IMG/VR virus record: IMGVR_UViG_3300036770_007495
Location: 124,001-188,000 of that record
DNA: 64,000 nucleotides
Strand: one strand, 5' to 3'
Shown: positions 8,133 through 60,627 of the stretch, piece by piece
How the letters are laid out: every line of letters starts with the position of its first letter
Position numbering within the stretch: position 1 is the first letter of the stretch
Notes under the pieces: model-generated
Told to the model about the DNA's origin: nothing
Database searches by the model: none
Seen by the model: the letters and a program-made list of their open reading frames with translations, nothing else
Program-made: the position numbers and the translations under genes

Positions 8133-9353
8133 ATGAATCATTCACCCTTTAGGCAACCTTTCAGAGCACCATTTGCGCCACCTGCCAGCATTGCGCCATT
8201 GGCTTCTGTGCCTGTTGCTGCACCAACAGTCAATACCCCTGAAGAAAATTTGCCTCGTGCATTGCAGTATGCTGCTGATACATCTGGGTGCGGTTTTTGG
8301 AGAATGATCTGGCCAGAGCATATTTTGAATGCCAATCAAAAAGCAATGATCACTACTACAACAGTGATGAATGCAAGTGAGAGCTTTTATGCACCTCTCA
8401 AAGCAATTCGCATTCAAAGACAAGCTACAGCACCTCAGCTTGAGTTTGTCAAATATTTGAAAGCTCTTCAGGGCAAATACGGTTTTCGCATCATTTACGA
8501 AATTGATGATGTTGTATTCCATGAAGATATTCCTGATTACAACAAATTTAAGTTTGCATTTGAATCACAGGAAATCAGAAACAACATCATGCAAATCATC
8601 AATTTGTGTGATGAGGTTACTGTGACCAACGAATTCATGCGCGATTATTTCCGCGAGAAAACAAACAAGCGCGAAATCTCTGTCATTCCAAACTTCCCAC
8701 CTGAATGGTGGATTGGTAGATACTATGATCCAAAGCGCAGCTACAATGCACTCTTGAAACACAAAAAGAAGCCACGCATTCTTTATGCTGGATCTGGTGC
8801 ACACTTTGATGTTGAAAACAAAGCTGGTCAGAAAGATGACTTTGAAGACATTGTAAAGCACATCATTGATACTCGGCACAAGTATACTTGGATTTTTATT
8901 GGTGCTGCTCCAATGCAGTTGATTCCATACATTCAGCGCAATGAGATTGAATTTCATCCATGGCAGCGCTTGTATGACTTTCCCAAGAAGATCTTTGAAT
9001 TGGAAGTGCAGATGCTCATTGCACCTTTGCAAGACAACAACTTCAACAGGTGCAAGAGTGACATCAAGTTCATTGAAGCATGCTGCATGGGATTGCCTGT
9101 TGCATGTCAGGACATGGTCACCTACAAAGATGCGCTCATCAAGTTTAAGACTGGTGAAGAAATGATGCACAAGATTGAAGAAACTCTCAAGCGTACCAAC
9201 AGGTATGTTGAAGATTCATATTCATTGCGCAAAATTGGTGAAAAGAGATTCTTGGAGCGTGATGAAAATCATGACTGCTACTTGGAATTGATTACAACAT
9301 CATATGGCAGCCCTGAGCGCAAAAATCTTTTGAGATACAATGATAGCATTTGA
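8133..9353 (+). CDS. GT-B fold glycosyltransferase
   Basis: SGCGFWRM..P, YEIDD, VIPN and IAPLQDNNFNRCKSDIKFIE..GLP donor-binding motif. Confidence 0.85.
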   Translation: MNHSPFRQPFRAPFAPPASIAPLASVPVAAPTVNTPEENLPRALQYAADTSGCGFWRMIWPEHILNANQKAMITTTTVMNASESFYAPLKAIRIQRQATAPQLEFVKYLKALQGKYGFRIIYEIDDVVFHEDIPDYNKFKFAFESQEIRNNIMQIINLCDEVTVTNEFMRDYFREKTNKREISVIPNFPPEWWIGRYYDPKRSYNALLKHKKKPRILYAGSGAHFDVENKAGQKDDFEDIVKHIIDTRHKYTWIFIGAAPMQLIPYIQRNEIEFHPWQRLYDFPKKIFELEVQMLIAPLQDNNFNRCKSDIKFIEACCMGLPVACQDMVTYKDALIKFKTGEEMMHKIEETLKRTNRYVEDSYSLRKIGEKRFLERDENHDCYLELITTSYGSPERKNLLRYNDSI

Positions 9354-12337: not shown

Positions 12338-12365
12338 AGAGCCGCAGAAATGCGGCTCTTTTTTT
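12338..12365 (+). terminator. Intrinsic terminator
   Basis: AGAGCCGCA-GAAA-TGCGGCTCT followed by a T run. Confidence 0.9.
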
Positions 12366-12376
12366 GTGGTTTGATC

Positions 12377-12404
12377 TTGATTTTCACTGGTGTCGCCATA
12401 CATA
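12377..12404 (+). promoter_or_regulatory. Sigma70-like promoter of uvsX
   Basis: TTGATT-N16-TACATA, 5 nt before ATG 12410, just after the terminator. Confidence 0.6.
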
Positions 12405-12409
12405 TTAAC

Positions 12410-13522
12410 ATGGACAAAGACATCATTTCAGCACTTGATAGCATCAACGAAATCAACCCCTACGCAACTTATCTCAACAACAATACACTCAGCACAGTCA
12501 AAGAATGGATTGATACTGGTTCTTATGTCTTGAATTCAATCATTTCTGGTTCACGCAATGGAGGTATTCCCAAGGGAAGAGTAACAATGATTGCAGGTGA
12601 ATCCATGACTGGTAAGTCTCTTTTTGTGCAAAAAATTCTTGCAAATGCACAGAAGATGGGTTTATTTCCTGTGATCTTTGACACTGAATCTGCCATTGAT
12701 CCTGAAGGTGCAAGTAGATTGGGATTGGATATTAGCAAAGTAAAGTATGTCCCATGTGTTAGCATTGAACAAACTAGAAATGCAGTATATAAATTTTTAG
12801 AAAGCATCAAAGAAAAAGGACTTGAAGGCAAGTTCATCGTAGCCATTGATTCTCTTGGCAACTTACAATCAGAATTGGAGTTGAAGCGCATGGATAAAGA
12901 AAGCACCAGCGCAGACATGGGCACCAAAGCTCGTGCCATGAAGTCACTTTTGCAAACATGCACCAACCTCGGAGCCATTACTCAAACAACTTTCGTAATA
13001 ACTAATCACGTATATGATGATCCAGCAGCAATGTATCCTAGCATTGAGAAGAATATGCCTGGCGGTAAATCAGTGGTATATCTCCCATCTGTCACTATTC
13101 AATTGGCTCGCAAGCCTCTGAAAGATGATGGAGGCAAAACTGTATCCAACAGCGATCTTGCAGTTGGTCAGAAGAATTATGGTGGCATCATCATCAGAGC
13201 ACTCACTCGCAAAAATCGATTCATCAAGCAGTACTTGGAGGGTGAAATGTACCTTTCATTCTCAACTGGGTTGGATCGCTATTACGGACTGCTTGATCTT
13301 GCTGTAGGCATGGGCGTTGTTGTGCAGAATGGTGCAACATATGCACTTGCTGATGGCACCAAACTTGGTTATGCTAAGAATTGGCGCAATGATGTAAAGT
13401 TGTGGGAAGAAACAATTCTTCCACAGCTTGAAGAAAAAATGAAAATTGAATGGGCATACGGCAACAAAAACAGCGAAGAAATTCCAGAAGAAGGAGGCAT
13501 TGAAGATGAAACCCAAGATTGA
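12410..13522 (+). CDS. uvsX: UvsX RecA-like recombinase
   Basis: IDTGSY.LN, GESMTGKS, FDTE, IDSLGNL, ADMG, TNHVY, PGG; the true start is ATG 12410. Confidence 0.95.
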   Translation: MDKDIISALDSINEINPYATYLNNNTLSTVKEWIDTGSYVLNSIISGSRNGGIPKGRVTMIAGESMTGKSLFVQKILANAQKMGLFPVIFDTESAIDPEGASRLGLDISKVKYVPCVSIEQTRNAVYKFLESIKEKGLEGKFIVAIDSLGNLQSELELKRMDKESTSADMGTKARAMKSLLQTCTNLGAITQTTFVITNHVYDDPAAMYPSIEKNMPGGKSVVYLPSVTIQLARKPLKDDGGKTVSNSDLAVGQKNYGGIIIRALTRKNRFIKQYLEGEMYLSFSTGLDRYYGLLDLAVGMGVVVQNGATYALADGTKLGYAKNWRNDVKLWEETILPQLEEKMKIEWAYGNKNSEEIPEEGGIEDETQD

Positions 13523-13775
13523 AATTCTATATTTTAGTGCAACATGGTGCGGTCCATGCAAGATGTTCAAACCCATTTTTGATCAATTCATCAGTGAGCA
13601 TCCTGAAGTTGAATGCAAATTCATTGATGTTGAACAGAGTGAAGGGTATGAACATTTCAGAGTAATGGCTGTACCCACCATTATTTTTCTTAAGAATGGC
13701 ATTGAGTGTGAAAGACTCTCTGGTTCAAAAAGTAAAAAAGTGCTTGAACAGACATTAGAAGACATTACATTCTAA
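13506..13775 (+). CDS. Thioredoxin
   Basis: FSATWCGPCK active site and cis-Pro loop AVPT. Confidence 0.92.
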   Translation: MKPKIEILYFSATWCGPCKMFKPIFDQFISEHPEVECKFIDVEQSEGYEHFRVMAVPTIIFLKNGIECERLSGSKSKKVLEQTLEDITF

Positions 13776-13776
13776 C

Positions 13777-14511
13777 ATGAAGAAAATTGTTGTACCTCTT
13801 TCTGGTGGCATGGACTCTGCAGTGCTGCTTTACAAGGCAGTTGAAGAAGCAGATGAAGTGCATTGCATCACATTTGATTATAGTCAGAGGCACAACAGAG
13901 AGTTGCAGTGTGCAGGATGGTTGTATGCAGATGCAAAATACAAAAGCAAGAAGCCAGTATTCTTGAAAAATGTAGATGCATCTTTTATTCGCCATCTTGC
14001 ACCAACTTCTTCTCTCACCAATGATTATATTGAAACACCAGACATCAGAAAGATTGCTGGAGAAGCACAGCCCAAGAGCTATGTACCATTTCGCAATCTG
14101 ATGTTTTTGAGCATTGCATTGTCTCATGCTGAGGCAGTTGGTGCAACAGAGGTGTGGCATGGTGCAACATCAGTTGATTCTTTGGCAGGGTATTGGGATG
14201 CTTCTCCTGAGTTTCTCCCACAGTTAAATGCTGTTGCAGCTCTCAATAGAGAGCACAAGATTCAAGTTGTTGCTCCATTGATTGCTTGTGATAAAGCAGA
14301 CATTGTGAAGATGGGTGTACAGTTGCAAGTACCATTTGCCAAGACATACACTTGCTATTCAGGTGAAGAGCTTGCAGATGCAACAACTCCAAGCAGCAGT
14401 CTCAGAATTCAAGGATTCCTCAAAGCAGGATACAAAGATCCCATCAAATACAAACAGCAAGAACAGATTGACAAGCTGTACATTCAGCACAACTGCCAAG
14501 ACATTGCTTAA
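13777..14511 (+). CDS. queC: QueC-family PP-loop ATPase, atypical (Zn-binding cysteines absent)
   Basis: LSGGMDS PP-loop, FDYSQRH..E, YVPFRNL.FLSIA, APL...KA.IV, TYTCY; YPDC is replaced by YWDA and CGxCxxC by ADATTPSS. Confidence 0.85.
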   Translation: MKKIVVPLSGGMDSAVLLYKAVEEADEVHCITFDYSQRHNRELQCAGWLYADAKYKSKKPVFLKNVDASFIRHLAPTSSLTNDYIETPDIRKIAGEAQPKSYVPFRNLMFLSIALSHAEAVGATEVWHGATSVDSLAGYWDASPEFLPQLNAVAALNREHKIQVVAPLIACDKADIVKMGVQLQVPFAKTYTCYSGEELADATTPSSSLRIQGFLKAGYKDPIKYKQQEQIDKLYIQHNCQDIA

Positions 14512-15518
14512 TAATAGCGATAGCGCTCTTCAATGCGCTGCATGTGCTGCTTGCGAGCAATTCTCATTTGTTCAGCAAGAATAGTTTGCTGTTTAGAATT
14601 GAGTTTGACGCTCTCTTCCAAATCCAATTGAATAGGACGTGCTTCACGAGCTTCTGGTTCTGGAGCAGGAGCAGCAGCTGCTGGAGCAGCAACTTGACCA
14701 AGCTTGTATTTTTCTGATCTATCACCACGCTCCAGCTCAATTTCTGTGACGTGAGATGCAAGAAGTTCATTGCTGACAATGTCACCAACCTTCTTAACAG
14801 CCTTGAGTGCAGAACTGTATTGAGGAGTTCTTGGTACATCCTTCAAACGCACATAGGTAAGCTTGTCACCATCCTGACCCATGAATGAAATGGATGCAAA
14901 TGTTCTCTGATCTTCAGAACGAATTGCTCCCTGTGGCTTGATGTCATTGTTGGTGATGCGCTGCATCAATTCTGCAGGCATTTCTTCTAAATCACCTGCT
15001 GGTGCAGCAGCTGCTGGTTCAGCTTCAACATCACCTTCTTCTGGAACTTCATCTTCAATTTCTTGAGCAATGTCTTGAACAGCAGCACGAACTTGACGTT
15101 CTCTTTGATTGGCAACATTGGCGAGATCCATGCCAAATGTTTCTTGAGCATATTCAATCCAACCTTGAATCCATTCATCTACTGAATTGTATCCTTTTTC
15201 TTGCAATTTTTCAGCAGTCAATTCTCGAAGAATTTCTTTGACCTCTTTGGTAGCAATGACGTTTTCAGCAATTTCAAGTGATTCTGCACAATATCTTGCA
15301 AAAGCAAGTTCTGCTTCACGATAAGATGTGCCTGCAACTTTGCGCAATCTACCATATCGACCTGTAGGAACTTCTTCGCCAATCTTGCCTGCAAAGAATT
15401 TTTTTGCTTCTTTGCCAGGGCCCCATCCAGGAATAGTCTTTTCAACATCTCCAATTTTGACCTTTTCATTCAAAATGTTGTGAGATGCCCAGCCTGGTCT
15501 TTTCAAAATATTGCTCAT
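14508..15518 (-). CDS. Late hypothetical protein, candidate internal head protein
   Basis: TAAATA 5 nt upstream; acidic with A/P-rich linkers; N-terminal segment ends ..ILNE. Confidence 0.75.
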   Translation of the reverse strand: MSNILKRPGWASHNILNEKVKIGDVEKTIPGWGPGKEAKKFFAGKIGEEVPTGRYGRLRKVAGTSYREAELAFARYCAESLEIAENVIATKEVKEILRELTAEKLQEKGYNSVDEWIQGWIEYAQETFGMDLANVANQRERQVRAAVQDIAQEIEDEVPEEGDVEAEPAAAAPAGDLEEMPAELMQRITNNDIKPQGAIRSEDQRTFASISFMGQDGDKLTYVRLKDVPRTPQYSSALKAVKKVGDIVSNELLASHVTEIELERGDRSEKYKLGQVAAPAAAAPAPEPEAREARPIQLDLEESVKLNSKQQTILAEQMRIARKQHMQRIEERYRYY

Positions 15519-15549
15519 GTTTTTATTTATTTATCTCACAACATAATTG

Positions 15550-15577
15550 TTGAAAAATGAATGGCTTAATGTATATT
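15550..15577 (+). promoter_or_regulatory. Sigma70-like promoter of the GATase gene
   Basis: TTGAAA-N16-TATATT, 7 nt before ATG 15585. Confidence 0.6.
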
Positions 15578-15584
15578 GTTGAAT

Positions 15585-16286
15585 ATGTGTGCCATTTTTG
15601 GATCATTTGACCGCAGCATGTACGATGTTTTGTTTGAATCAAACAATGCAAGAGGCAATTTTGCTTACAGTCATTGTTTTCTCAACTCAAAAAGTGCTGC
15701 ACCTTTTCACATCAAAAAGTTCAATAAAATTCCAAAAATCAATGATATTACAGATGTGAGTTCAAATGTGTATCATTTTGGTCATTTTCAAGCACCCACC
15801 AGTTCAGTAAGAACATGGAAAGAAGAAACAAGTCACCCATTTGAGCATGGTGATTGGATTGTTGCTCACAATGGCGTTCTCACCAACTTTAAAGAGCTTG
15901 CTGATGAATATGCGCCCATGCTCAACATCAAAGTTGATAGTGCAATCATTCCAATGATGCTTGCAAATCATACATTTGAAATTGATGCCAAGCAAAAAGA
16001 TGCAGCAATGATTGAAAATGCTGTAAAAACTGTTTTGGAAAAACTCAAAGGCACATTTGCATTGTGGATCATCAATCGCAAGCACAAACGAGCTTTTGTT
16101 GCGCGTCAAGGCAGCACTCTTTTTGCAAATGCTAGCACCGGGAGCTTTTGTTCTGTTGAATGCAAAAGTGAAGGGTGGAGTGAACTATCAGAAGGTTACA
16201 TCTACGAAGTGCTCTTCAAAGCAAAGTGCCTTGCTCCATTTGCTAAGTTTAGCATTGACTCTCCATTCTTGTTTATTCAAGAGTAA
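15585..16286 (+). CDS. Stand-alone class II (Ntn) glutamine amidotransferase
   Basis: Starts M-C-A-I-F-G (catalytic Cys1); RG, GHFQAPT, HPF, VAHNG.LTN..EL, VDS, LKGTFA, AR motifs. Confidence 0.88.
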   Translation: MCAIFGSFDRSMYDVLFESNNARGNFAYSHCFLNSKSAAPFHIKKFNKIPKINDITDVSSNVYHFGHFQAPTSSVRTWKEETSHPFEHGDWIVAHNGVLTNFKELADEYAPMLNIKVDSAIIPMMLANHTFEIDAKQKDAAMIENAVKTVLEKLKGTFALWIINRKHKRAFVARQGSTLFANASTGSFCSVECKSEGWSELSEGYIYEVLFKAKCLAPFAKFSIDSPFLFIQE

Positions 16287-16629
16287 GGAGATATCTGAGA
16301 TGATTCATTGCTCCAATCATCTCATCTCTAATGTTGAGCAAATCAGAATGAGATTGAATGTCTTCAACTTCATTGGTGAGCATTGAAATTGCATTGGTGA
16401 GAATCTTTTCAAGGTCAGTGGTTTCATCCAAATTTCTCAAATCCAGGCTCTGTGCAAATGCAACGCGGCCATAAATGCCCTGATAAGTTTCAACAAATGT
16501 ATCCAACAAATCGCCCAAAGAATCATAGAATTTGCCAAAAGCTTTGTGACGAGCATATGATTTGGTTTGCCAATGATAAATTCTAATCTGAAGTTGCAGA
16601 TAAATGAGCTGAGCAATAATTCTTGACAT
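16273..16629 (-). CDS. Ferritin/Dps-like four-helix protein (DUF5856-like)
   Basis: IYHWQTKSYARHKA..FY..L..LLDTFVE.YQG.YGR ... NIRDEM...YLLTL; TAAATA 5 nt before ATG 16629. Confidence 0.8.
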   Translation of the reverse strand: MSRIIAQLIYLQLQIRIYHWQTKSYARHKAFGKFYDSLGDLLDTFVETYQGIYGRVAFAQSLDLRNLDETTDLEKILTNAISMLTNEVEDIQSHSDLLNIRDEMIGAMNHLRYLLTLE

Positions 16630-16639
16630 ACATGTATTT

Positions 16640-16954
16640 ATGAGCGAAATAAGAAAATTTGAAACTGGTGCACACAGAAATGATGATGCTAACAAACCCA
16701 AAATGTCATTGATTCCGCATGCTGAATTGATGCGAGTGCTTGCACGATATCGAGCAGGTGCTGATAAATTTGGAGCACACAATTGGAAAAATGGCATGCA
16801 ATTGTCTGAATTGTATGATAGTGCTCAGCGACATTTGACCAGCTGGTACATGAAAGATCAGAGTGAGGATCATGCTGCAGCTGCAGTTTGGAATATTCTT
16901 TGTGCCATGTGGATGGAACAAAACAAACCTCAAATGGATGACAGAATTTTATGA
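16640..16954 (+). CDS. DUF5664-like (dATP/dGTP diphosphohydrolase N-terminal domain) protein
   Basis: FETGA.R....KP..SLIP, GA.K.G..NW..G, SA.RHL..W, EDH.AA..WN. Confidence 0.8.
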   Translation: MSEIRKFETGAHRNDDANKPKMSLIPHAELMRVLARYRAGADKFGAHNWKNGMQLSELYDSAQRHLTSWYMKDQSEDHAAAAVWNILCAMWMEQNKPQMDDRIL

Positions 16955-17628
16955 AAACAACGTTGTATGTGAGTTGCACACAAAAAAGCAATGAAGAGGA
17001 TACTTTGATTAATCAGAGTGCGTACAATACAGGCTTCTTGGGTGAAGATGATACACTGCACATTGTTACCAACAATCGCAGAGGTCTCAGCAAAGTTTAC
17101 AATGAGTTCATCAATGAAAAAATTGCCAAAGAGCATGACCGCATCGTTTTCGTTCATGATGATGTCTACATTGATGATGTCATGATCAATGTGAAGCTCA
17201 ATGAAGCAATGTATGGTGAATCAAAGTTTGACATTGTGGGTCTTGCTGGAACACGCAACCCACAAATTAAACACCCTGCATTGTGGCACATCATGGGCAA
17301 GCGCGAAGATCATCGCGGATATGCTGGTCACATTTTTGGCAAACACAAAGTCATGACTGGGTTTGGACCCACTCCAGATCGTGTTGCCATCATTGATGGT
17401 TTGTTTGTTGCAGTCAATGTTGCTCGTGCACTTGAAACTGGATGGAGGTGGAATGAAAACTTTGATTTTCATCATTATGACATTGCAAGCTGCATTGATG
17501 CAAATGCCAAAGGCATGCGCATTGGAGTATGGCCCATCAATGTGTTTCATGCATCTCCTGGACTTGCAAGCCTAGAAGATGTTGCATGGAGCAAGAGCAA
17601 TGAAAAATTCTTACAGTTGTATTCCTGA
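16951..17628 (+). CDS. GT-A fold glycosyltransferase
   Basis: GLSKVYN, FVHDDV (DxD-like), GLAG, IDGLF, FHHYD; ATGA overlap with the DUF5664-like gene. Confidence 0.85.
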   Translation: MKTTLYVSCTQKSNEEDTLINQSAYNTGFLGEDDTLHIVTNNRRGLSKVYNEFINEKIAKEHDRIVFVHDDVYIDDVMINVKLNEAMYGESKFDIVGLAGTRNPQIKHPALWHIMGKREDHRGYAGHIFGKHKVMTGFGPTPDRVAIIDGLFVAVNVARALETGWRWNENFDFHHYDIASCIDANAKGMRIGVWPINVFHASPGLASLEDVAWSKSNEKFLQLYS

Positions 17629-17651: not shown

Positions 17652-18974
17652 ATGAATTTAGACTTGGATTGGATGGAAAAAGTAGTGACATACAAGTCAC
17701 TGGTGGATGAAGAATATTTGCTAACAATCATTGATCATGTAAAGCCAGAGTATTTCACAGACAAGAATCTGCAGGTTGTGTTTGATGTAGTATGCAATTT
17801 CTACAACAAACGCAAAGCATTGCCTACCAACTCTGAAATCAGAGCATATCTTGATACAGATGAAAAACGAGAGAGCTTCAAGAAAGCACTCAACATCATT
17901 TCAACTGTTGACAAGAATCTCAACAGAGATGAATTGTATGACAATACAGAGCGCTTTTTAAAAGAACGCGGCATTTATCAGACCATGATGTCTGTTGCCA
18001 AAGATGTTGGCAGTGGCAACATTGATACCAGTAAAATTCTGGATCAGTTTGAAAAATCATGCACTGTTACTTTGGTGCATGACATTGGATTGGATCTGCT
18101 CACAAATTTTGATCGAGTAGTTCAAGATCTCAAGCGAGTTGATCCTACAATTTCAACTGGATACAAATGGCTTGATGAAAAGCTTGGTGGGGGTTTCATG
18201 CAAGATGGAAGAGCCATGTATGTGTTTGCTGGTGAGACCAACATTGGCAAAAGCATCATTCTAGGCAATTTTGCAGTCAACATTGCCAAGCAAAAGAAAA
18301 CTGTGCTGGTAATTTCTCTTGAAATGTCAGAGATGGTTTATGCTAAACGTCTAACAGCTCAAATTGCAAAAACACCAACTGGCAAACTTGCCGATGATGT
18401 TGAAGTTGTTGAAGCAAAAATGCACAACTTCAAAGATGCGACTGGCGGCAGAATCATCATCAAAGAGTTTCCGCCAAGCTGCATGTCTCCAAGAGACATT
18501 CAAGGTTACATCACCAAAGTTATCAAGAAAGGTATTCACATTGATGCAATTGTTCTAGACTACATCAACTTGCTTACAACCACACGAGGCAAAGATTCAT
18601 ATGAACGCATCAAATACATCAGTGAAGAAACTCGTGCACTGACATACATCTTCAAATGCCCCATCATCACTGTTACTCAGCTCAACAGAACAGGTTACTC
18701 TGTGAGTGAACCAGGACTGACATCATTGAGTGAGAGTTATGCTCTTGGTGCAACTGCTGACTTCATTGCCAGTGCATGGCAAGGTGAAGGTGACAATGAA
18801 GCAGGCATTTTGAGACAATCCATTCTTAAAAATCGCTTTGGTCGTAATCTCGGAACCAATGCATTCAAGATTGATTATTCAACACTCACCATCTCTGAAG
18901 ATCAAGCGCTCAACAACATGACTCAAGATTCTGAAGATGTAGCCAAGGCACTCAGCATCTTAACACAAGGTTGA
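17652..18974 (+). CDS. 41: gp41 DnaB-family replicative helicase
   Basis: GETNIGKS, SLEMSE, IIKEFP, LDYINL, TQLNR, KNRFG. Confidence 0.95.
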   Translation: MNLDLDWMEKVVTYKSLVDEEYLLTIIDHVKPEYFTDKNLQVVFDVVCNFYNKRKALPTNSEIRAYLDTDEKRESFKKALNIISTVDKNLNRDELYDNTERFLKERGIYQTMMSVAKDVGSGNIDTSKILDQFEKSCTVTLVHDIGLDLLTNFDRVVQDLKRVDPTISTGYKWLDEKLGGGFMQDGRAMYVFAGETNIGKSIILGNFAVNIAKQKKTVLVISLEMSEMVYAKRLTAQIAKTPTGKLADDVEVVEAKMHNFKDATGGRIIIKEFPPSCMSPRDIQGYITKVIKKGIHIDAIVLDYINLLTTTRGKDSYERIKYISEETRALTYIFKCPIITVTQLNRTGYSVSEPGLTSLSESYALGATADFIASAWQGEGDNEAGILRQSILKNRFGRNLGTNAFKIDYSTLTISEDQALNNMTQDSEDVAKALSILTQG

Positions 18975-27852: not shown

Positions 27853-28119
27853 ATGAATACCACTGATATCCAAAATGCTCCCTCCAAGACAATGTCTCTT
27901 GATGAAATCGTTCGCTGGAACTGTTTGATTGAAGCCATCAAAGTTGCAGACATTCAAATGAAACATCTAGGCATTGATCCAGAAAAGTACGATTGGGTCA
28001 AGCCTGTTGCCATTGAAAAATACATTGATGAGCGATTTCATTCCATGAAACACGACATTGTGTATGAGATCAAAAATGGTGTGGAGGTGGAAAAAGAAGA
28101 AGATCTGTTTTTCAAATGA
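27853..28119 (+). CDS. Hypothetical protein
   Basis: ATG 27853 lies 5 nt after TTGATC-N17-TACATT (27819-27847). Confidence 0.7.
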   Translation: MNTTDIQNAPSKTMSLDEIVRWNCLIEAIKVADIQMKHLGIDPEKYDWVKPVAIEKYIDERFHSMKHDIVYEIKNGVEVEKEEDLFFK

Positions 28120-29093
28120 TATACGTTGTAAGCTCAACAAACAAAACAGGAATTAGCATGTCGGCGCAGGGTTACCTGCGCCCTCTGCGTGTTGCCGGCA
28201 TTGATCATGAGTTTGTTGATTACAGAGATTTTTTGAAAGATGTTGCTGCTTATCAAAACAAGAAGTGTTTGATTGTGCCAGTTCCATCTGCATGGAGATT
28301 CACCTTAAAAGATCAAGTGCCTTTCATCAATGCATTTGTTTGTGAGTCCAACGTAATACCAGAATCTGATGCAAAGAAATTGAGATACATTGAACAAATC
28401 TGGACACCCAGCAGATTTTGTCAAAAGGTGCTTTTCAACAATCATTTTGCAAGCAAGTATGTTCCATACAGCATGGAAATGCCTTTGAGAGAATGCACCA
28501 AAAATCAAAAGGTGTATACATTTCTTTGTTCCTTTGACGGCAAGTTTACCATTCATCGCAAAGGTATTATTCATGCCATCACTGCATTCAAAAGAGCATT
28601 TGAAGATATTGAGAATGTTGCAATGGTGATCAAAACATTTGACCTCAAGCCAGCAAGTGAAAAGCTTTTGAATGAATGCATCAATGGTGACAAAAGAATA
28701 ACAATCAAAACCAATTTTGTCGAGACAGTTGATGAAATCTATGATGATGTAGACTGCTATGTTTCATTGCATGCATCAGAAGGTTTTGGACGACACATTG
28801 CAGAAGCAATGCTTCGCAAAATAACTGTCATTTGCACCAACTATGGAGGCAATACTGATTTTTGCACACCTGAAACAGCCAAACTTGTAGACGGTGAATT
28901 TATTAACCACAAACATGATGCACAATATCATTGGAATGGGCTCTGGATTTATCCCAACATTCTTCACGCACAATTGCACATGCGCCGATTGTATGAAGGA
29001 TGGGTGCATACAGATGTTGAAAAAGCTTATAAACAAGTTAAATCTATGTATAGTGATGAAGCTGTAGCAAACATCATTAAGAAAATTTTATGA
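28116..29093 (+). CDS. GT4-family glycosyltransferase
   Basis: IWTPS.F, RKG, DCYVSLHASEGFG..IAEAM...VI.TNYGGN. Confidence 0.9.
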   Translation: MIYVVSSTNKTGISMSAQGYLRPLRVAGIDHEFVDYRDFLKDVAAYQNKKCLIVPVPSAWRFTLKDQVPFINAFVCESNVIPESDAKKLRYIEQIWTPSRFCQKVLFNNHFASKYVPYSMEMPLRECTKNQKVYTFLCSFDGKFTIHRKGIIHAITAFKRAFEDIENVAMVIKTFDLKPASEKLLNECINGDKRITIKTNFVETVDEIYDDVDCYVSLHASEGFGRHIAEAMLRKITVICTNYGGNTDFCTPETAKLVDGEFINHKHDAQYHWNGLWIYPNILHAQLHMRRLYEGWVHTDVEKAYKQVKSMYSDEAVANIIKKIL

Positions 29094-29827
29094 ATATACT
29101 ATTTTTTCATATTCCTAAAACAGCAGGAACTTTTTTTGCTAATCAACTAAAACACACACTCAAGCTTAATCTGTATAGATATTTTACACAGAGCAAAATA
29201 CTCGAAGCATTGAACTGTAATACAATGCCTGAAAACTCTCTAGAGGCTCTCAAGAATGTAAGATGCATCAAGACCTCACAATATGAACCTTGTATAAATG
29301 CAGATACTATTTTTGATAATGATGATATAGCTTTATATGCACATGAATTTGATGAATCAATACAAAAATTTTTTAATTCAGATAAATGGATAAAGACAAC
29401 CATTGTGCGTGATCCTACAGAGAGATTATTTTCTGCATACGCGCAGCGCCAGCGCAATAATGATTTAAATGAGTTTGCGCATTGTGTAGACTTATATCAG
29501 TTTTATTTTGTCTATCATTCACTTACACGTGATGAGCATAAGATGGAATTAAATGATGATACTGCCCCCATTATTCTAGAGCAGTCAATTAAAATTATGA
29601 AAGATAAATTTAATACTATCTTTCATCAAACTCATTTAACTCAGCAATTTACAAGAGTTTTCTCACATGTAAATAGTTTAAATGTAATAAGTGAAAGAAG
29701 TTGCAATATTACAGACGATCATGAGATACTAACAATAGATTATTCAACAGCAAAAAAACTCTGCAAATTTATTAACTATGATTATGAGTTTGTAAGAATT
29801 TTTAATGAAAGTCTACTTTACGCATGA
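29090..29827 (+). CDS. Sulfotransferase (family 2-like)
   Basis: FFHIPKTAGT (5'-PSB) and RDP.ERL.SAY (3'-PB) motifs. Confidence 0.85.
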   Translation: MNILFFHIPKTAGTFFANQLKHTLKLNLYRYFTQSKILEALNCNTMPENSLEALKNVRCIKTSQYEPCINADTIFDNDDIALYAHEFDESIQKFFNSDKWIKTTIVRDPTERLFSAYAQRQRNNDLNEFAHCVDLYQFYFVYHSLTRDEHKMELNDDTAPIILEQSIKIMKDKFNTIFHQTHLTQQFTRVFSHVNSLNVISERSCNITDDHEILTIDYSTAKKLCKFINYDYEFVRIFNESLLYA

Positions 29828-31089
29828 AAAAACAATTAGTAGTTGCAAGATACAAAGAGAATTTAGATTGGGTTAAAGACATTGCGTGTGTAGACAATAT
29901 AGTAATTTACAACAAAGGTGATGAAATTGTTGATTGTGATTTAAAAAGACACACAATAATACAATTATCAAATGTTGGCAGAGAAGCTCATACATATCTA
30001 TTTCATATTATAGAAAATTATTATAATTTAGAAGACATAATAATTTTTTCACAGGGTGATCCTTTCCCACACATACATACTCATAAAATAAACAAAGGAA
30101 CAACACTCAACGAGCACCTGTCAGCTGTTAATTTTAACACACTTGACTGCAATTCGTTGTTTGGTAAAGATTATGATGAGAGTGTAGGTCTTTTTGCAAA
30201 AAGTCTCTTTGAATACTGTTTCAAAAATGAGCTACCACCCGCGGTAAATTTTTCACCAGGTGCACAATATATAGTACCAAAATCTTGCATACTCACTAAA
30301 TCTCTTAATTTTTACAAAGACTTATATGAGAGTTTATGCATACATAGAACTGGTGTAAAAGACGGAATTTGCAATGCATGGACTGTAGAAAGAATATGGA
30401 CGTACATTTTCAATAATAAATACAAAGAAAGAGATGTATTTGCAAACTCCTCAGTAGCTACAATGTATAGTACAAAATACAATATTGAACACCTGACTCA
30501 AAAAGAAGATCAAGCAGTTATTGGTCCGCTGCAGGATGATGAAGCGCTTCTGTTGTATGCTATGATACGAGTTACAAGAATAAAGAATATCATTGAAGTC
30601 GGATTTGGACAAGGTCACTCAGCTCGCAATTTCTTAAAGGCTGTTGGCTTAGACGGAAAAGTCGTAAGTATAGACAGTAGTACAGCTCATCAACTTTCAC
30701 CCAATCATACGCCAATTTTGCAGAATGCAGAAAACATTAAAGCATCAGATATCCCATTTACAAAAGCAGATTTAGTTTTTTATGATTGTCATCACTACGA
30801 TGCACAAATGTCGCTGCATAAAAAATTGCTTGAGAGTAATATTATTACAGATGATACTATTTTGGCGTTGCATGATACAGGTCTTCATCCATACAAGGTA
30901 GTAAATTGGTCATATGAAATAGATGGTGGATGGGTACATCAAGCTGTAGAGAGAAGAATGGTTAACACTCTCAAGAGTCAGGGGTGGGATGCAATGTGCT
31001 TGGATACAAAAAAAGAAGATTATGATTGTGGGCTACTTTATAGACATGGTATTACAATTATGAAAAAATTTAAGCAGCTTATCACATGA
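29824..31089 (+). CDS. DUF3431-like domain fused to class I SAM methyltransferase (Methyltransf_24-like)
   Basis: N-terminal VVARYKE.LDW, NVGREAHTYL.HI..NY, F.QG.PF.H, GAQY.V; C-terminal IIEVG..G.S, D..H.Y, LHDT. Confidence 0.85.
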   Translation: MKKQLVVARYKENLDWVKDIACVDNIVIYNKGDEIVDCDLKRHTIIQLSNVGREAHTYLFHIIENYYNLEDIIIFSQGDPFPHIHTHKINKGTTLNEHLSAVNFNTLDCNSLFGKDYDESVGLFAKSLFEYCFKNELPPAVNFSPGAQYIVPKSCILTKSLNFYKDLYESLCIHRTGVKDGICNAWTVERIWTYIFNNKYKERDVFANSSVATMYSTKYNIEHLTQKEDQAVIGPLQDDEALLLYAMIRVTRIKNIIEVGFGQGHSARNFLKAVGLDGKVVSIDSSTAHQLSPNHTPILQNAENIKASDIPFTKADLVFYDCHHYDAQMSLHKKLLESNIITDDTILALHDTGLHPYKVVNWSYEIDGGWVHQAVERRMVNTLKSQGWDAMCLDTKKEDYDCGLLYRHGITIMKKFKQLIT

Positions 31090-32072
31090 AGATTGTAATA
31101 GTAGGTGCAGGATTGTCTGGTGCTGTAGCAGGTCGGCTACTAGTAGAAAAAGGACATTCTGTGACTATTTTTGAAACACGGAGCCACATAGCAGGTAATT
31201 GCTACGACTCAAATGTATGTGGCACAATGGTACACAACTACGGACCGCACATCTTTCACACAGATGATGAAGAGGTCTTTGCATTTTTATCTCAATTTAC
31301 TGAATGGGTGCCTTTTGAGTATAAGCCAAAAGGTATAACACGGCTTGGTGTTATTTCTTTACCATACAGCAAAAAAACACAGAATGAACTCAAAAGAGAA
31401 CTTTCACAGGAAGAAATTATTGATGTAATATTCAAAGACTATTCAGAAAAACAATGGGGCACATCATTTGATCAAATTCCTAAATCTATTACTAATAGAA
31501 TTCCCAAGACAAAGGATTGTGAAGATCCAACATGGTATGAAGGACAAAAATACCAATGTATCCCTAAAGATGGGTATACAAAAATGTTTGAAAAAATGCT
31601 GCAGGGAATTGATGTAAAACTAAATTGTTCCAGTAATGATTGGAGAGAGGAGTTTGCGGACCTTGTAATTTTTACAGGCAAAATAGATGAGTATTTTGAT
31701 TACTGTTTCGGACATCTTCCATATCGATCTCTTTGGTTTAAACACATCACATCTGAAAATAAATTTGATGTTGTTGCCTACAACCAGAATACAAAAATGG
31801 TTGATTTTACTAGAACGTATGATCATAGTTTTTTTACACCCAATCACAAAGGCACCACTATAATTACAGAAGAATATCCAGAGCCATACAATGGCAAAAA
31901 TACTCCTTTTTACCCAATTCCATGGGGTGAGGGATTACAGATGTATGCAAAATATAAAGAACTTGCTGATAAAGAGCAAAACACTATTTTTATAGGTAGA
32001 CTCGCAACATATACTTATCTCGATATGTGGATGGCAGTCAAGCAAGCATTTTTAAAGCTCAAAAACATATAG
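31086..32072 (+). CDS. glf: UDP-galactopyranose mutase
   Basis: GAGLSG, GNCYD, HNYGPHIFHT, YQ.IP.DGYT, LPYRSL, PFYP, GRLATY.Y.DM. Confidence 0.95.
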   Translation: MKIVIVGAGLSGAVAGRLLVEKGHSVTIFETRSHIAGNCYDSNVCGTMVHNYGPHIFHTDDEEVFAFLSQFTEWVPFEYKPKGITRLGVISLPYSKKTQNELKRELSQEEIIDVIFKDYSEKQWGTSFDQIPKSITNRIPKTKDCEDPTWYEGQKYQCIPKDGYTKMFEKMLQGIDVKLNCSSNDWREEFADLVIFTGKIDEYFDYCFGHLPYRSLWFKHITSENKFDVVAYNQNTKMVDFTRTYDHSFFTPNHKGTTIITEEYPEPYNGKNTPFYPIPWGEGLQMYAKYKELADKEQNTIFIGRLATYTYLDMWMAVKQAFLKLKNI

Positions 32073-60186: not shown

Positions 60187-60627
60187 ATGGCTCACAAAGA
60201 GTTTAAACAAGGCGTTTACAAGCCCATCAACAGGCAGAAATACATTGGTGATAAACTGCCTTTTTATAGATCAGGTTATGAGCTAAAATTCATGCGATGG
60301 GCTGATGCTAACCCCAATGTTTTGAAGTGGGGAAGTGAAAGCATCATTGTCCCTTACAAGAGCCCCATTGATGGTAAAATGCATCGCTATTTTGTAGATA
60401 ATGTGGTCATCATCAAAGAAGGAGAAAACATCAAAAAATATCTCATTGAGATCAAACCACACAAACAAACACAGCCGCCAACTGCTCATGGCAACAAAAA
60501 ACAGACCACCATTTTGTATGAGCAAGCTACATATGTCATCAATCAAGCCAAATGGGAAGCAGCAAAGAAGTGGTGCAAAGATCATGAATGGGAGTTTCTC
60601 ATCTTAACAGAGAAGCATTTGCCATAA
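60187..60627 (+). CDS. 4: gp4 head completion nuclease (TnsA-like)
   Basis: G.YKP.N..KY.GD, YRS.YE..FM.W.D.NP.V..W.SE, HRYF.D, EIKP..QT, NQAKW.AA, ILTE. Confidence 0.92.
   Translation: MAHKEFKQGVYKPINRQKYIGDKLPFYRSGYELKFMRWADANPNVLKWGSESIIVPYKSPIDGKMHRYFVDNVVIIKEGENIKKYLIEIKPHKQTQPPTAHGNKKQTTILYEQATYVINQAKWEAAKKWCKDHEWEFLILTEKHLP

What the first reader, a model, noticed from the sequence alone, without database searches (positions are those of the whole stretch)
13777..17628. Candidate undescribed amidation/hypermodification pathway: Zn-less QueC + stand-alone GATase + DUF5664-like + GT-A, inside the replication module
Seen: the + strand order uvsX-trx-queC*-(late gene, -)-GATase-(ferritin, -)-DUF5664-GT-A-gp41, with a GT-B between gp46 and gp43. 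Known: fused GAT-QueC occurs in archaeosine synthesis and phage 7-deazaguanine DNA modification; an Ntn-GAT plus PP-loop ATPase is the asparagine synthetase B architecture for amidating carboxylates; nucleotide diphosphohydrolases deplete canonical dNTPs in base-substituting phages. No folE, queD, queE or dpdA/tgt is recognisable in this window, and the QueC has altered substrate/Zn motifs. Inference: a split GAT/QueC amidates a substrate other than CDG (a carboxylated base or a nucleotide-sugar acid), possibly coupled to glycosylation and dNTP-pool editing. The DenA-like nuclease would fit selective destruction of unmodified host DNA.
Basis: partly seen in the sequence, partly recalled or inferred. 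Interest (0 to 1): 0.85.

Follow-up and report, generated by a model that had tools for sequence, protein, structure and literature searches.

The report
Split preQ0 synthase of deazaguanine-DNA phage
The zinc-less QueC and the separate glutamine amidotransferase are most likely one step of an already described phage pathway that replaces guanine in DNA with a 7-deazaguanine derivative, the rest of which lies just outside the window; only the split, zinc-free form and a conserved neighbouring glycosyltransferase are new.

Summary

I walked the whole 224.7-kb source contig.
- FolE, QueD and QueE lie 0.2-4.2 kb left of the window.
- About 46 kb from QueC sits a block DpdA3, DpdN-like formyltransferase, AAA_28 kinase-like protein, QueF.
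[quoted passage not shown] All G in that phage's DNA was measured as fdPreQ1.
- The zinc-less QueC is the only QueC in the genome. It keeps the four residues shown essential in E. coli QueC and passes NCBI's QueC equivalog cut-off.
- Immuto's own QueC also lacks the zinc cysteines.

The GAT keeps every class-II catalytic residue and directly follows QueC in most relatives. It is homologous to the Gat half of phage Gat-QueC fusions and to an unannotated GAT next to QueC in KVP40-like phages.

Best reading: a glutamine-fed, two-subunit preQ0 synthase. The role of the conserved GT-A is open. This is a new variant of a known system, of moderate interest.

The parts
13777..14511 (+). QueC, zinc-less variant (244 aa). 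It is the only QueC-family gene in the 224.7-kb genome and the inferred ATP-dependent CDG to ADG to preQ0 synthase subunit.
   Evidence: PF06508 E 7e-51. TIGR00364 155.2 bits against a cut-off of 150.3. PDB QueC 2pg3 E 1e-27. Motifs read. Single copy in the genome.
15585..16286 (+). Stand-alone class-II (Ntn) glutamine amidotransferase, 233 aa, starting MCAIFG. It is the inferred ammonia-donating subunit for QueC.
   Evidence: PF13522 E 4.5e-9 and PHROG 10428. C2, R23-G24, H95-N96-G97 and D118 are invariant, also in the KVP40 and phi-Grn1 GATs and the JenP2 Gat domain. It starts right after the QueC stop in most relatives. Present in all 39 related loci with enough sequence to judge.
16951..17628 (+). 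GT-A fold glycosyltransferase (Glyco_tranf_2_5), 225 aa. It is a conserved neighbour of QueC and GAT; its acceptor is unknown and its membership in the pathway is not shown.
   Evidence: PF13712 E 1.2e-8. AF2 model pLDDT 92.9; best PDB match is majastridin with UDP (2qgi), TM 0.72. Present in 35 of 37 related loci, and QueC, GT-A, GAT are contiguous in the distant locus L039. No homologue in cultured phages.
16640..16954 (+). MazZ-like (dATP/dGTP diphosphohydrolase N-terminal domain, DUF5664) protein, 104 aa. It is an accessory gene with only a loose link to the pathway.
   Evidence: PF18909 E 2e-20. Among the QueC loci it occurs only in the two closest relatives. A 53-59% identical gene sits between DpdN and the kinase-like gene in 4 of 80 DpdA3 loci. 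The family is widespread in unrelated phages.

Best explanation
The QueC (13777-14511) and the class-II GAT (15585-16286) together form a two-subunit, glutamine-dependent preQ0 synthase. It serves a complete phage pathway for 7-deazaguanine DNA modification.

The pathway as encoded on the same 224.7-kb T4-like genome:
1. FolE, QueD and QueE convert GTP to CDG.
2. QueC adenylates the CDG carboxylate. Ammonia released from glutamine by the Ntn-cysteine of the GAT converts it to the amide ADG. A second ATP-dependent dehydration gives the nitrile preQ0.
3. QueF reduces preQ0 to preQ1.
4. DpdA3 exchanges the base for guanine in DNA.
5. The DpdN-like formyltransferase makes 7-(formylamino)methyl-7-deazaguanine (fdPreQ1), as measured in Flavobacterium phage immuto_2-6A.

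Shown here: presence, homology, gene order, single-copy status and intact catalytic motifs of all these genes.

Inferred: that the GAT docks on QueC, that the zinc-less QueC still reaches the nitrile, and that the final base is fdPreQ1.

The zinc site is taken to be structural and dispensable. The GT-A is a conserved neighbour of unknown acceptor. The MazZ-like gene, DUF5856 and the 336-aa ORF are not core parts.
For: - Same contig: FolE (phrog_2197, 8e-62), QueD (phrog_2389, 2.5e-34) and QueE (phrog_2076, 5.6e-36) lie 0.2-4.2 kb left of the window.
- DpdA3 is 50.8% identical (E 5e-74) to the immuto_2-6A DNA guanine transglycosylase and about 45% to the CP220 and CPt10 homologues.
- The formyltransferase is 44.5% identical to DpdN YP_010114479.1 (PMC10516641).
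- QueF is 46% identical (E 9e-88), with the catalytic Cys and the QueF motif.
- The order DpdA3, DpdN, kinase-like, QueF is the same as in immuto and holds in 70-79 of 80 environmental loci.
- The whole contig was tiled with 0 mismatches and holds exactly one QueC.
- QueC keeps Y35, R106, Y139 and Y194, the counterparts of the residues essential in E. coli QueC (PMC13329287). It passes TIGR00364.
- Immuto's QueC also lacks the zinc cysteines, and its DNA is fully fdPreQ1 (PMC10516641, Table 1).
- GAT catalytic residues are invariant, and the GAT aligns with the Gat domain of JenP2 Gat-QueC. tblastn of the GAT finds Gat-QueC genes of 9g-like phages.
- KVP40 and phi-Grn1 carry QueC followed by a homologous stand-alone GAT. 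phi-Grn1 DNA contains dPreQ1 and mdPreQ1 and no dG+ (PMC10516641), so such a pair is compatible with release of preQ0.
Against: - There is no biochemical or DNA-composition data for this phage; it is uncultured.
- The fused Gat-QueC of phage 9g gives G+ and does not complement a queC deletion (PMC6884629), so a GAT partner could push the product to the amidine instead of preQ0.
- The Cys of the YPDC motif is lost (YWDA), and its role in nitrile formation is unknown.
- The host's own QueC could be what feeds QueF.
- In the window the two genes are separated by a 1-kb opposite-strand ORF.
- The GT-A's tight linkage is unexplained by this model.
- QueF scores below the NCBIfam equivalog cut-off (262 against 293 bits).
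Confidence: 0.7

Rival explanations
1. QueC plus GAT works as a split archaeosine-type synthase, or as an ADG synthase of the QueC* kind. It would convert CDG to the amidine G+ or stop at the amide ADG without releasing preQ0. The DNA would then carry dG+ or dADG, alone or alongside a preQ1 derivative made from host preQ0.
For: The GAT's closest cultured-phage relatives are the Gat domains of the Gat-QueC fusions of 9g-like phages, which yield dG+ (PMC6884629). DpdA3 phages of the CP220 type carry dADG (PMC10516641). The YPDC cysteine and the zinc site are lost. Vibrio phage nt-1, a relative of KVP40, shows traces of dG+ and dADG (PMC6884629).
Against: The genome encodes an intact bimodular QueF and a DpdN-like formyltransferase in the conserved block with DpdA3. 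These need preQ0 or preQ1, and this is the only QueC in the genome. phi-Grn1, with the same split arrangement, has dPreQ1 and mdPreQ1 and no dG+ (PMC10516641). The CP220-type QueC* is only 27% identical and keeps its zinc motif.
Confidence: 0.15
2. The zinc-less QueC and the GAT amidate a substrate other than deazaguanine, such as a carboxylated base or a nucleotide-sugar uronic acid, and the GT-A then transfers it. That would be an AsnB- or WbpG-like sugar amidation module.
For: QueC, GT-A and GAT are contiguous in L039, and the GT-A is kept next to the pair in 35 of 37 loci. The genome is very rich in glycan genes. PP-loop sugar amidotransferases exist within the QueC superfamily (PMC13329287).
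Against: QueC scores above the QueC equivalog cut-off, and its best solved relatives are true QueCs. The CDG-site motifs are kept. The Asn_synthase hit is below cut-off (18.4 against 21 bits). WbpG-type motifs are absent. A complete CDG-producing and preQ0-consuming gene set in the same genome would otherwise lack its QueC step. L035 and L036 keep QueC and GAT without the GT-A.
Confidence: 0.05
3. The GAT is not a partner of QueC. It serves another enzyme, such as the GT-A or an aminosugar step, and its adjacency to QueC only reflects the conserved gene order of T4-like replication modules. QueC would use free ammonium, as bacterial QueC does.
For: Most of the 40 loci belong to one phage clade with inherited synteny, so they are not independent observations. 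In the window the genes are not adjacent. Immuto_2-6A showed no GAT homologue by tblastn.
Against: Natural Gat-QueC fusions exist, and both proteins match the fusion's profile. The pairing recurs in three separate contexts: this clade, L039 with a different gene order, and KVP40-like phages with QueC immediately followed by GAT. The QueC stop abuts the GAT start in most relatives.
Confidence: 0.1

Closest known systems
[quoted passage not shown] 2023, PMC10516641)
   Same: All seven genes have homologues in this genome. The block DpdA3, DpdN, kinase-like, QueF is in the same order at 51/44/32/46% identity. A small phosphoribosyltransferase is also shared (32%). Both QueCs lack the zinc cysteines.
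   Different: This is a T4-like myovirus with a family-B polymerase, not an Immutovirus. Its genes are scattered over three sites 14-49 kb apart. It has a stand-alone GAT and a GT-A beside QueC, for which no homologue was detected in immuto. The DNA composition is not measured here.
Gat-QueC fusion (archaeosine-type synthase) of phage 9g, JenP2 and Crenarchaeota (PMC6884629)
   Same: It has a class-II Ntn GAT plus a QueC PP-loop domain. Both window proteins hit the fusion's PHROG profile at complementary positions. The GAT catalytic residues are shared.
   Different: Here the two are separate genes. The QueC half is closer to stand-alone QueCs (36-40%) than to the fusion's QueC domain (about 28%). 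The fusion keeps the zinc motif. The fusion's product is G+ and comes with DpdA1 and no QueF; here QueF, DpdN and DpdA3 are present.
QueC plus adjacent unannotated class-II GAT of KVP40-like Vibrio phages (KVP40.0124/0125; phi-Grn1 0236/0237)
   Same: They are T4-like phages with a stand-alone QueC immediately followed by a roughly 200-aa GAT homologous to the window's. QueF is encoded in the same cluster. dPreQ1 derivatives were measured in phi-Grn1 DNA (PMC10516641).
   Different: The KVP40-type QueC keeps the zinc motif and YWDC. These phages use DpdA2 and DpdM, with low modification levels. They have no GT-A neighbour. The GAT is listed only as hypothetical and is not discussed in the papers read.
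QueC* / DpdA3 dADG system of Campylobacter phage CP220
   Same: It is a T4-like myovirus with a DpdA3 homologue (45%), and its QueC homologue sits in the replication module next to the DNA polymerase.
   Different: The CP220-type QueC* is only 27% identical and keeps its zinc motif. No GAT homologue was found there. The dADG end product implies no nitrile reduction, whereas this genome has QueF and DpdN.

Membership tests
Canonical QueC (7-cyano-7-deazaguanine synthase; PF06508 cluster 1, TIGR00364) | PP-loop SGGxDS | tested here: met
   SGGMDS at residues 9-14; invariant in alignments A1 and A2.
Canonical QueC (7-cyano-7-deazaguanine synthase; PF06508 cluster 1, TIGR00364) | YxQxHxxE and VPxRN motifs, K165, and the Tyr after the first Cys. 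In E. coli, Y35, R99 and Y189 are essential (PMC13329287). | tested here: met
   YSQRHNRE at 35-42, VPFRN at 103-107, K173, C193-Y194.
Canonical QueC (7-cyano-7-deazaguanine synthase; PF06508 cluster 1, TIGR00364) | YPDC substrate motif | tested here: inconclusive
   The motif reads YWDA. The essential Tyr and the Asp are kept; Pro is replaced by Trp (as in KVP40) and Cys by Ala. Within the clade the last position is A, G, S or C.
Canonical QueC (7-cyano-7-deazaguanine synthase; PF06508 cluster 1, TIGR00364) | C(x)8CxxCxxC zinc site | tested here: not met
   Only the first Cys remains. The other three positions are D, T and S. None of the 120 best homologues has CxxCxxC.
Canonical QueC (7-cyano-7-deazaguanine synthase; PF06508 cluster 1, TIGR00364) | Score above the curated equivalog cut-off | tested here: met
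   TIGR00364 gives 155.2 bits against a cut-off of 150.3. The match ends before the zinc region.
Canonical QueC (7-cyano-7-deazaguanine synthase; PF06508 cluster 1, TIGR00364) | Co-encoded with queD and queE | tested here: met
   QueD and QueE are on the same contig, about 16-18 kb from QueC.
Canonical QueC (7-cyano-7-deazaguanine synthase; PF06508 cluster 1, TIGR00364) | Converts CDG to preQ0 with two ATP and ammonia | not testable with these tools
   This needs an enzyme assay or complementation of a queC deletion.
Gat-QueC fusion (archaeosine-type synthase) | Class-II GAT domain fused N-terminally to QueC in one polypeptide | tested here: not met
   They are two genes: 1 kb apart in the window, and abutting but separate in relatives.
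Gat-QueC fusion (archaeosine-type synthase) | Catalytically competent Ntn GAT (Cys1, Arg-Gly, His-Asn-Gly, Asp) | tested here: met
   C2, R23-G24, H95-N96-G97 and D118 are invariant across 11 sequences, including the JenP2 Gat domain.
Gat-QueC fusion (archaeosine-type synthase) | Product is G+ and free preQ0 is not released | not testable with these tools
   The presence of QueF and DpdN argues indirectly against it.
DpdA3-type 7-deazaguanine DNA modification system, fdPreQ1 subtype | DpdA3 transglycosylase | tested here: met
   L051:13733-14530 is 50.8% identical over 97% of its length (E 5e-74) to immuto gp206, and 45% to the CP220 homologue.
DpdA3-type 7-deazaguanine DNA modification system, fdPreQ1 subtype | DpdN formyltransferase next to DpdA3 | tested here: met
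   44.5% identical (E 8e-36) to YP_010114479.1. PF00551. NxHP and DxG motifs are present. It is adjacent to DpdA3.
DpdA3-type 7-deazaguanine DNA modification system, fdPreQ1 subtype | [quoted passage not shown] | tested here: met
   QueD has CxxxHGY, as immuto's QueD does, and not the DpdL motif.
DpdA3-type 7-deazaguanine DNA modification system, fdPreQ1 subtype | Virion DNA with G replaced by fdPreQ1 | not testable with these tools
   The phage is uncultured. All public runs holding it are kept as contigs only.
QueC* (proposed ADG synthase of CP220-type phages) | QueC homologue in a pathway that ends at the amide, with no nitrile-consuming enzyme | tested here: not met
   QueF and DpdN are present in this genome. 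Identity to the CP220-type QueC* is only 27%.
   PF00733 scores 18.4 bits, below the cut-off of 21, and only over the PP-loop. No WbpG-type motifs are in the sequence.
MazZ of Z-genome phages (dATP/dGTP diphosphohydrolase) | N-terminal domain PF18909 | tested here: met
   E 2e-20, covering residues 11-102.
MazZ of Z-genome phages (dATP/dGTP diphosphohydrolase) | Works alongside PurZ and DatZ | tested here: not met
   No adenylosuccinate-synthetase-like or DatZ-like family turned up in the Pfam annotation available for the contig. ORFs below the size cut-offs and a few large window ORFs were not scanned.

The most novel reading that the evidence does not exclude
DpdA3-type modules may not act purely after replication. 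They may work at least partly at the nucleotide level.

The observations behind this:
- An AAA_28 kinase-like gene is a fixed member of the DpdA3, DpdN, QueF block (72 of 80 loci).
- A MazZ-like NTP diphosphohydrolase, 53-59% identical to the window's, is inserted into that block in 4 of 80 loci, and in the window it sits beside the GAT.
- A small phosphoribosyltransferase is shared with immuto.
- NUDIX and a second AAA_28 gene follow QueE.

Together these could make a modified (d)NTP and deplete dGTP, which would explain complete G replacement. A second variant of the same idea: the conserved GT-A adds a sugar to the deazaguanine side chain, giving a base not yet described.
Probability: 0.1. 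Interest if true: 0.85.

Novelty: new variant of a known kind. Interest (0 to 1): 0.38.

Why it matters
The finding extends the fdPreQ1 / DpdA3 guanine-replacement system from one cultured Flavobacterium phage and a few uncultured sequences to a large clade of T4-like phages. Runs holding the stretch come from freshwater, lake, estuary, soil and subsurface metagenomes. There are hundreds of DpdA3 loci in IMG/VR and more than 1400 QueC homologues in the protein database.

It also points to three things not discussed in the papers I read. QueC can do without its zinc site. QueC can have a separate glutamine amidotransferase subunit, also present but unannotated in KVP40-like phages since 2003. 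A GT-A travels with the pair.

These are directly testable with recombinant proteins. Such tests could also clarify how fused Gat-QueC enzymes choose between nitrile and amidine products. It does not open a new class of biology.

Tried and rejected
- Megablast of 8 kb against cultured phages found nothing. The polymerase is at most 32% identical to any cultured phage.
- I searched for DpdA1, DpdA2, ArcS-like and other neighbours from KVP40, JenP2 and the Campylobacter phage WX1 by tblastn and phmmer. There were no hits apart from FolE, QueE and QueF.
- The 336-aa ORF between FolE and QueD was tested as a DpdA candidate. It is low-complexity, with no PDB or KVP40 similarity, so I rejected it.
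- The 336-aa opposite-strand ORF between QueC and GAT has no Pfam or PHROG hit, an Atlas model pLDDT of 0.49, and no homology to the 282-aa ORF at the equivalent place in L010. I treat it as an unrelated insertion.
- DUF5856 against the Dps-like protein next to FolE in the CP220-like phage showed no detectable similarity.
- The GT-A has no homologue in cultured phages. Foldseek gives only generic GT-A matches.
- A QueC tree, built to decide whether zinc loss in immuto and in this clade is shared or independent, was unresolved because of long branches.
- A read-level modification signal was not possible. All 24 runs are stored as contigs.
- A hydroxymethyl-pyrimidine route for the glycosyltransferases was looked for. 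Among the ORFs with Pfam annotation only ThyX was found, and no ThyA or hydroxymethylase family.

Full report
**1. Observation**

- uvsX: 12350-13522.
- Thioredoxin: ends at 13775.
- QueC: 13777-14511, PF06508, E 7e-51.
- A 336-aa ORF with no family hit on the minus strand: 14508-15518.
- Class-II glutamine amidotransferase (GAT): PF13522, E 4.5e-9.
- DUF5856 on the minus strand.
- dGTP_diPhyd_N (the former DUF5664): 16640-16954, E 2e-20.
- GT-A of family Glyco_tranf_2_5: 16951-17628.
- gp41: 17652-18974.
- A GT-B-like protein at 8133-9353, between gp46 and gp43.

Two coordinates need correcting. The GAT starts at ATG 15585, which gives the N-terminus MCAIFG with the nucleophile Cys right after Met. 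DUF5856 is 16273-16629 in JGI's gene call, so it does not overlap the next gene.

The QueC C-terminus reads TCYSGEELADATTPSSSLRIQGF. Only the first Cys of C(x)8CxxCxxC survives; the other three positions are D, T and S. All 120 best database homologues, down to 56% identity, also lack CxxCxxC. The trait is therefore fixed in a large environmental clade and is not an error.

None of the window ORFs scanned hits FolE, QueD, QueE, TGT or QueF families. The scans covered nearly all called ORFs of about 110 aa or more, but not several large minus-strand ORFs between 34.8 and 51.8 kb that look structural. The same arrangement appears in independent assemblies of other samples.

**2. Where the window comes from**

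QueC is 100% identical to a gene on IMG/VR contig UViG_3300036770_007495, which is JGI Ga0310126_0000060 (224,703 bp). The window is contig positions 124,001-188,000. The phage is a very divergent T4-like myovirus. Its gp43 is at most 32% identical to any cultured phage, and megablast finds nothing.

I walked the whole contig using the gene look-up and the viral-contig scans. Sixteen pieces tile positions 1-215,904 with 0 mismatches. The last 8.8 kb are covered by a near-identical Logan contig, which also shows that the genome is circularly permuted.

**3. What lies outside the window**

Immediately left of the window lie three genes of the CDG pathway:

| Gene | Contig position | Evidence |
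|---|---|---|
| FolE | 123,175-123,822 | PF01227; phrog_2197, 8e-62 |
| QueD | 121,462-122,088 | PF01242; phrog_2389, 2.5e-34 |
| QueE-like radical-SAM | 119,790-120,662 | phrog_2076, 5.6e-36 |

QueD carries CxxxHGY, like the QueD of phage immuto, and not the DpdL motif.

At 88.5-91.4 kb lies a block of four genes:
- a 265-aa protein;
- Formyl_trans_N (172 aa);
- an AAA_28 kinase-like protein (181 aa);
- a bimodular QueF (309 aa).

- The 265-aa protein is 50.8% identical over 97% of its length (E 5e-74) to that phage's 'DNA guanine transglycosylase'. It is about 45% identical to hypothetical proteins of Campylobacter phages CP220 and CPt10. This is the DpdA3 family.
- The formyltransferase is 44.5% identical (E 8e-36) to YP_010114479.1, the protein named DpdN (PMC10516641).
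- QueF is 46% identical (E 9e-88) and has the catalytic Cys and the QueF motif.
- The kinase-like protein and a small phosphoribosyltransferase are each 32% identical to immuto genes.

Immuto has the same order: DpdA3, DpdN, 'thymidylate kinase', QueF. So do 70-79 of 80 environmental DpdA3 loci. Immuto DNA was measured as fully substituted by fdPreQ1, at 345,000 per million nucleotides (PMC10516641, Table 1).

An HMM and phmmer scan of all six frames of the genome finds exactly one each of QueC, GAT, this GT-A, DpdA3, QueF, FolE, QueD and QueE. The rest of the genome, as far as it is annotated, has ThyX. No ThyA or hydroxymethylase, TGT, ArcS or PurZ family was found in it.

**4. QueC itself**

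The 2026 survey of the QueC family (PMC13329287) defines canonical QueC by these motifs: SGGxDS, YxQxHxxE, VPxRN, YPDC, K165 and the zinc motif. It shows that Y35, R99, Y131 and Y189 are essential.

The window protein has:
- SGGMDS;
- YSQRHNRE at positions 35-42;
- VPFRN;
- Y139 within YWDA;
- K173;
- C193-Y194.

It scores 155.2 bits on the QueC equivalog model TIGR00364, whose cut-off is 150.3. Its best solved relatives are QueC 2pg3 and 3bl5. The Asn_synthase hit is below its cut-off and covers only the PP-loop. The substrate pocket therefore looks like a CDG pocket.

Zinc loss is not tied to a new function, for two reasons. Immuto's QueC (gp028) also lacks all the zinc cysteines (TSY ... 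KSASSVER). A 40% identical QueC in locus L039 keeps the zinc site while having the same GT-A and GAT neighbours. The CP220-type QueC* keeps its zinc motif and is only 27% identical. A tree could not resolve whether the two zinc losses are shared or independent.

**5. The GAT**

Eleven sequences were aligned: clade members, L039, KVP40.0125, phi-Grn1 0237 and the Gat domain of the JenP2 Gat-QueC. C2, R23-G24, H95-N96-G97 and D118 are invariant. This is the full set needed for glutamine hydrolysis by an Ntn amidotransferase.

Several lines link the GAT to QueC.
- Both window proteins match the fusion family PHROG 10428 at complementary positions: GAT at profile 89-187, QueC at 345-475.
- tblastn of the GAT finds the Gat-QueC genes of 9g-like and Vibrio siphophages.
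- In the related loci the GAT start abuts the QueC stop, for example 10720/10721 in L010.
- All 39 loci with enough sequence to judge have both genes.
- In KVP40 and phi-Grn1, QueC is followed directly by a homologous 202-aa GAT. It is annotated only as a PF00310 match or as hypothetical.
- phi-Grn1 DNA carries dPreQ1 and mdPreQ1 and no dG+ (PMC10516641). A split QueC/GAT pair is therefore compatible with release of preQ0 to QueF.

**6. The other genes in the interval**

GT-A.
- It is present in 35 of the 37 related loci where it could be judged, and absent from L035 and L036.
- In L039, a more distant T4-like phage with a different local order, the genes QueC, GT-A and GAT are contiguous.
- The AF2 model is confident (pLDDT 92.9). 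It matches the UDP-binding GT-A majastridin at TM 0.72, and beyond that only generic GT-A enzymes.
- No cultured phage has a homologue.
- Its acceptor cannot be inferred. The genome holds at least a dozen other glycosyltransferases, so a role in a glycan rather than in DNA is equally possible.

MazZ-like gene.
- Among the QueC loci it occurs only in the two closest relatives, and the family is common in unrelated phages.
- A 53-59% identical copy is inserted between DpdN and the kinase-like gene in 4 of 80 DpdA3 loci. That is a weak but real link.

DUF5856 is restricted to the nearest relatives and is not detectably related to the Dps-like gene next to FolE in CP220-like phages. The 336-aa ORF is acidic, low-complexity and poorly folded, and I treat it as an unrelated insertion.

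**7. Mechanism**

The best-supported reading is a pathway of six steps.
1. GTP is converted to CDG by FolE, QueD and QueE.
2. CDG is adenylated on QueC.
3. Ammonia from glutamine, delivered by the GAT, gives the amide ADG.
4. A second ATP-dependent dehydration gives preQ0.
5. QueF reduces preQ0 to preQ1.
6. DpdA3 inserts the base into DNA, and DpdN formylates it to fdPreQ1.

Shown: gene content, homology, order, single-copy status and motif integrity.

Inferred: the QueC-GAT contact, the nitrile end point of the zinc-less QueC, and the final base.

The main rival is that the pair behaves like fused Gat-QueC, which gives G+, or like QueC*, which gives ADG.

**8. Comparison and novelty**

The system is a member of the published DpdA3/DpdN (fdPreQ1) type of 7-deazaguanine DNA modification. 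Three features are new relative to the papers I read:
- a separate GAT subunit for QueC;
- zinc-less QueC as a widespread form;
- a GT-A that travels with the pair.

A full-text search found no paper after 2023 that mentions DpdA3 or DpdN. I file this as a new variant of a known kind, of moderate interest.

**9. Limits**

There is no DNA-composition or enzymatic evidence. The public runs that hold the stretch come from freshwater, lake, estuary, soil and subsurface metagenomes and are stored only as contigs. Co-occurrence of the QueC/GAT/GT-A set and the DpdA3 block on one contig was shown for this genome and for one relative, contig 3300010334_006426 (loci L010 and L117), because the search returns only the best 80 loci.

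Noticed in passing
window 28116-32072 (+), and source-contig loci L046, L049, L050, L052: There is a low-GC (0.34-0.36) sugar cluster in the window: GT1, sulfotransferase, DUF3431+methyltransferase and UDP-galactopyranose mutase. The whole genome carries at least 12 glycosyltransferases (GT7C, GT8, GT10, GT11, GT17, DUF5672 and others). It also has 2 sulfotransferases, an APS kinase, an NDP-sugar pyrophosphorylase and about 5 epimerases/dehydratases. That is unusually rich for a T4-like phage.
   Followed up: partly
L051:15084-15629 (contig 89,468-90,013); L043:15479-16903: An AAA_28 kinase-like gene is a fixed member of the DpdA3, DpdN, QueF block (72 of 80 environmental loci, and also in immuto). 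A NUDIX gene and a second AAA_28 gene follow QueE. No role in deazaguanine modification is mentioned in the papers read. This hints at a nucleotide-level step.
   Followed up: partly
L051:4099-4566 (contig about 100.5 kb); L169:14692-17076: A small phosphoribosyltransferase is 32% identical to the one between QueE and FolE in immuto_2-6A. Elsewhere in the genome are PRPP synthetase and NAMPT, the NAD salvage pair known from KVP40.
   Followed up: partly
L138:1-2413 (contig about 75.4-77.9 kb): A PSCyt2/PSD1 (DUF1549/DUF1553) protein and a DUF1501 protein form a pair typical of Planctomycetes-like bacteria. Here they are encoded next to gp15 and the portal gene. Related viral contigs keep them at 72-98% identity. 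This may be a clue to the host.
   Followed up: no
window 14508-15518 (-); L043:12143-13153; L010:11392-12240 (-): Acidic or Ala/Gly/Pro-rich low-complexity ORFs, two of them on the strand opposite to their neighbours, interrupt runs of early genes: between QueC and GAT, between FolE and QueD, and between GAT and GT-A in relatives. They are not detectably homologous to each other.
   Followed up: partly
window 60187-60627 (+): A TnsA-like endonuclease N-terminal domain protein (PF08722, E 2.4e-21) lies between the tail sheath region and a lysozyme-domain protein.
   Followed up: no
Nothing ties it to the modification genes beyond being in the same genome.
   Followed up: no
L039:7682-8269; L049:9402-10004: A DUF366 protein lies two genes downstream of QueC, GT-A, GAT in L039. 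In the source genome it sits at the end of the sugar cluster. Its function is unknown.
   Followed up: no
window 13446-13775 (+): The start of the thioredoxin gene is ambiguous. The Pfam match needs the TTG start at 13446, which overlaps the uvsX end by 77 nt, while JGI calls a 70-aa product from 13563.
   Followed up: no
L042:9714-10322 (KVP40.0125); L134:5714-6322 (phi-Grn1 0237): KVP40-like Vibrio phages encode an unnamed class-II GAT directly after QueC, inside their deazaguanine cluster. It appears as 'hypothetical' in the records and is not discussed in the deazaguanine papers read.
   Followed up: yes
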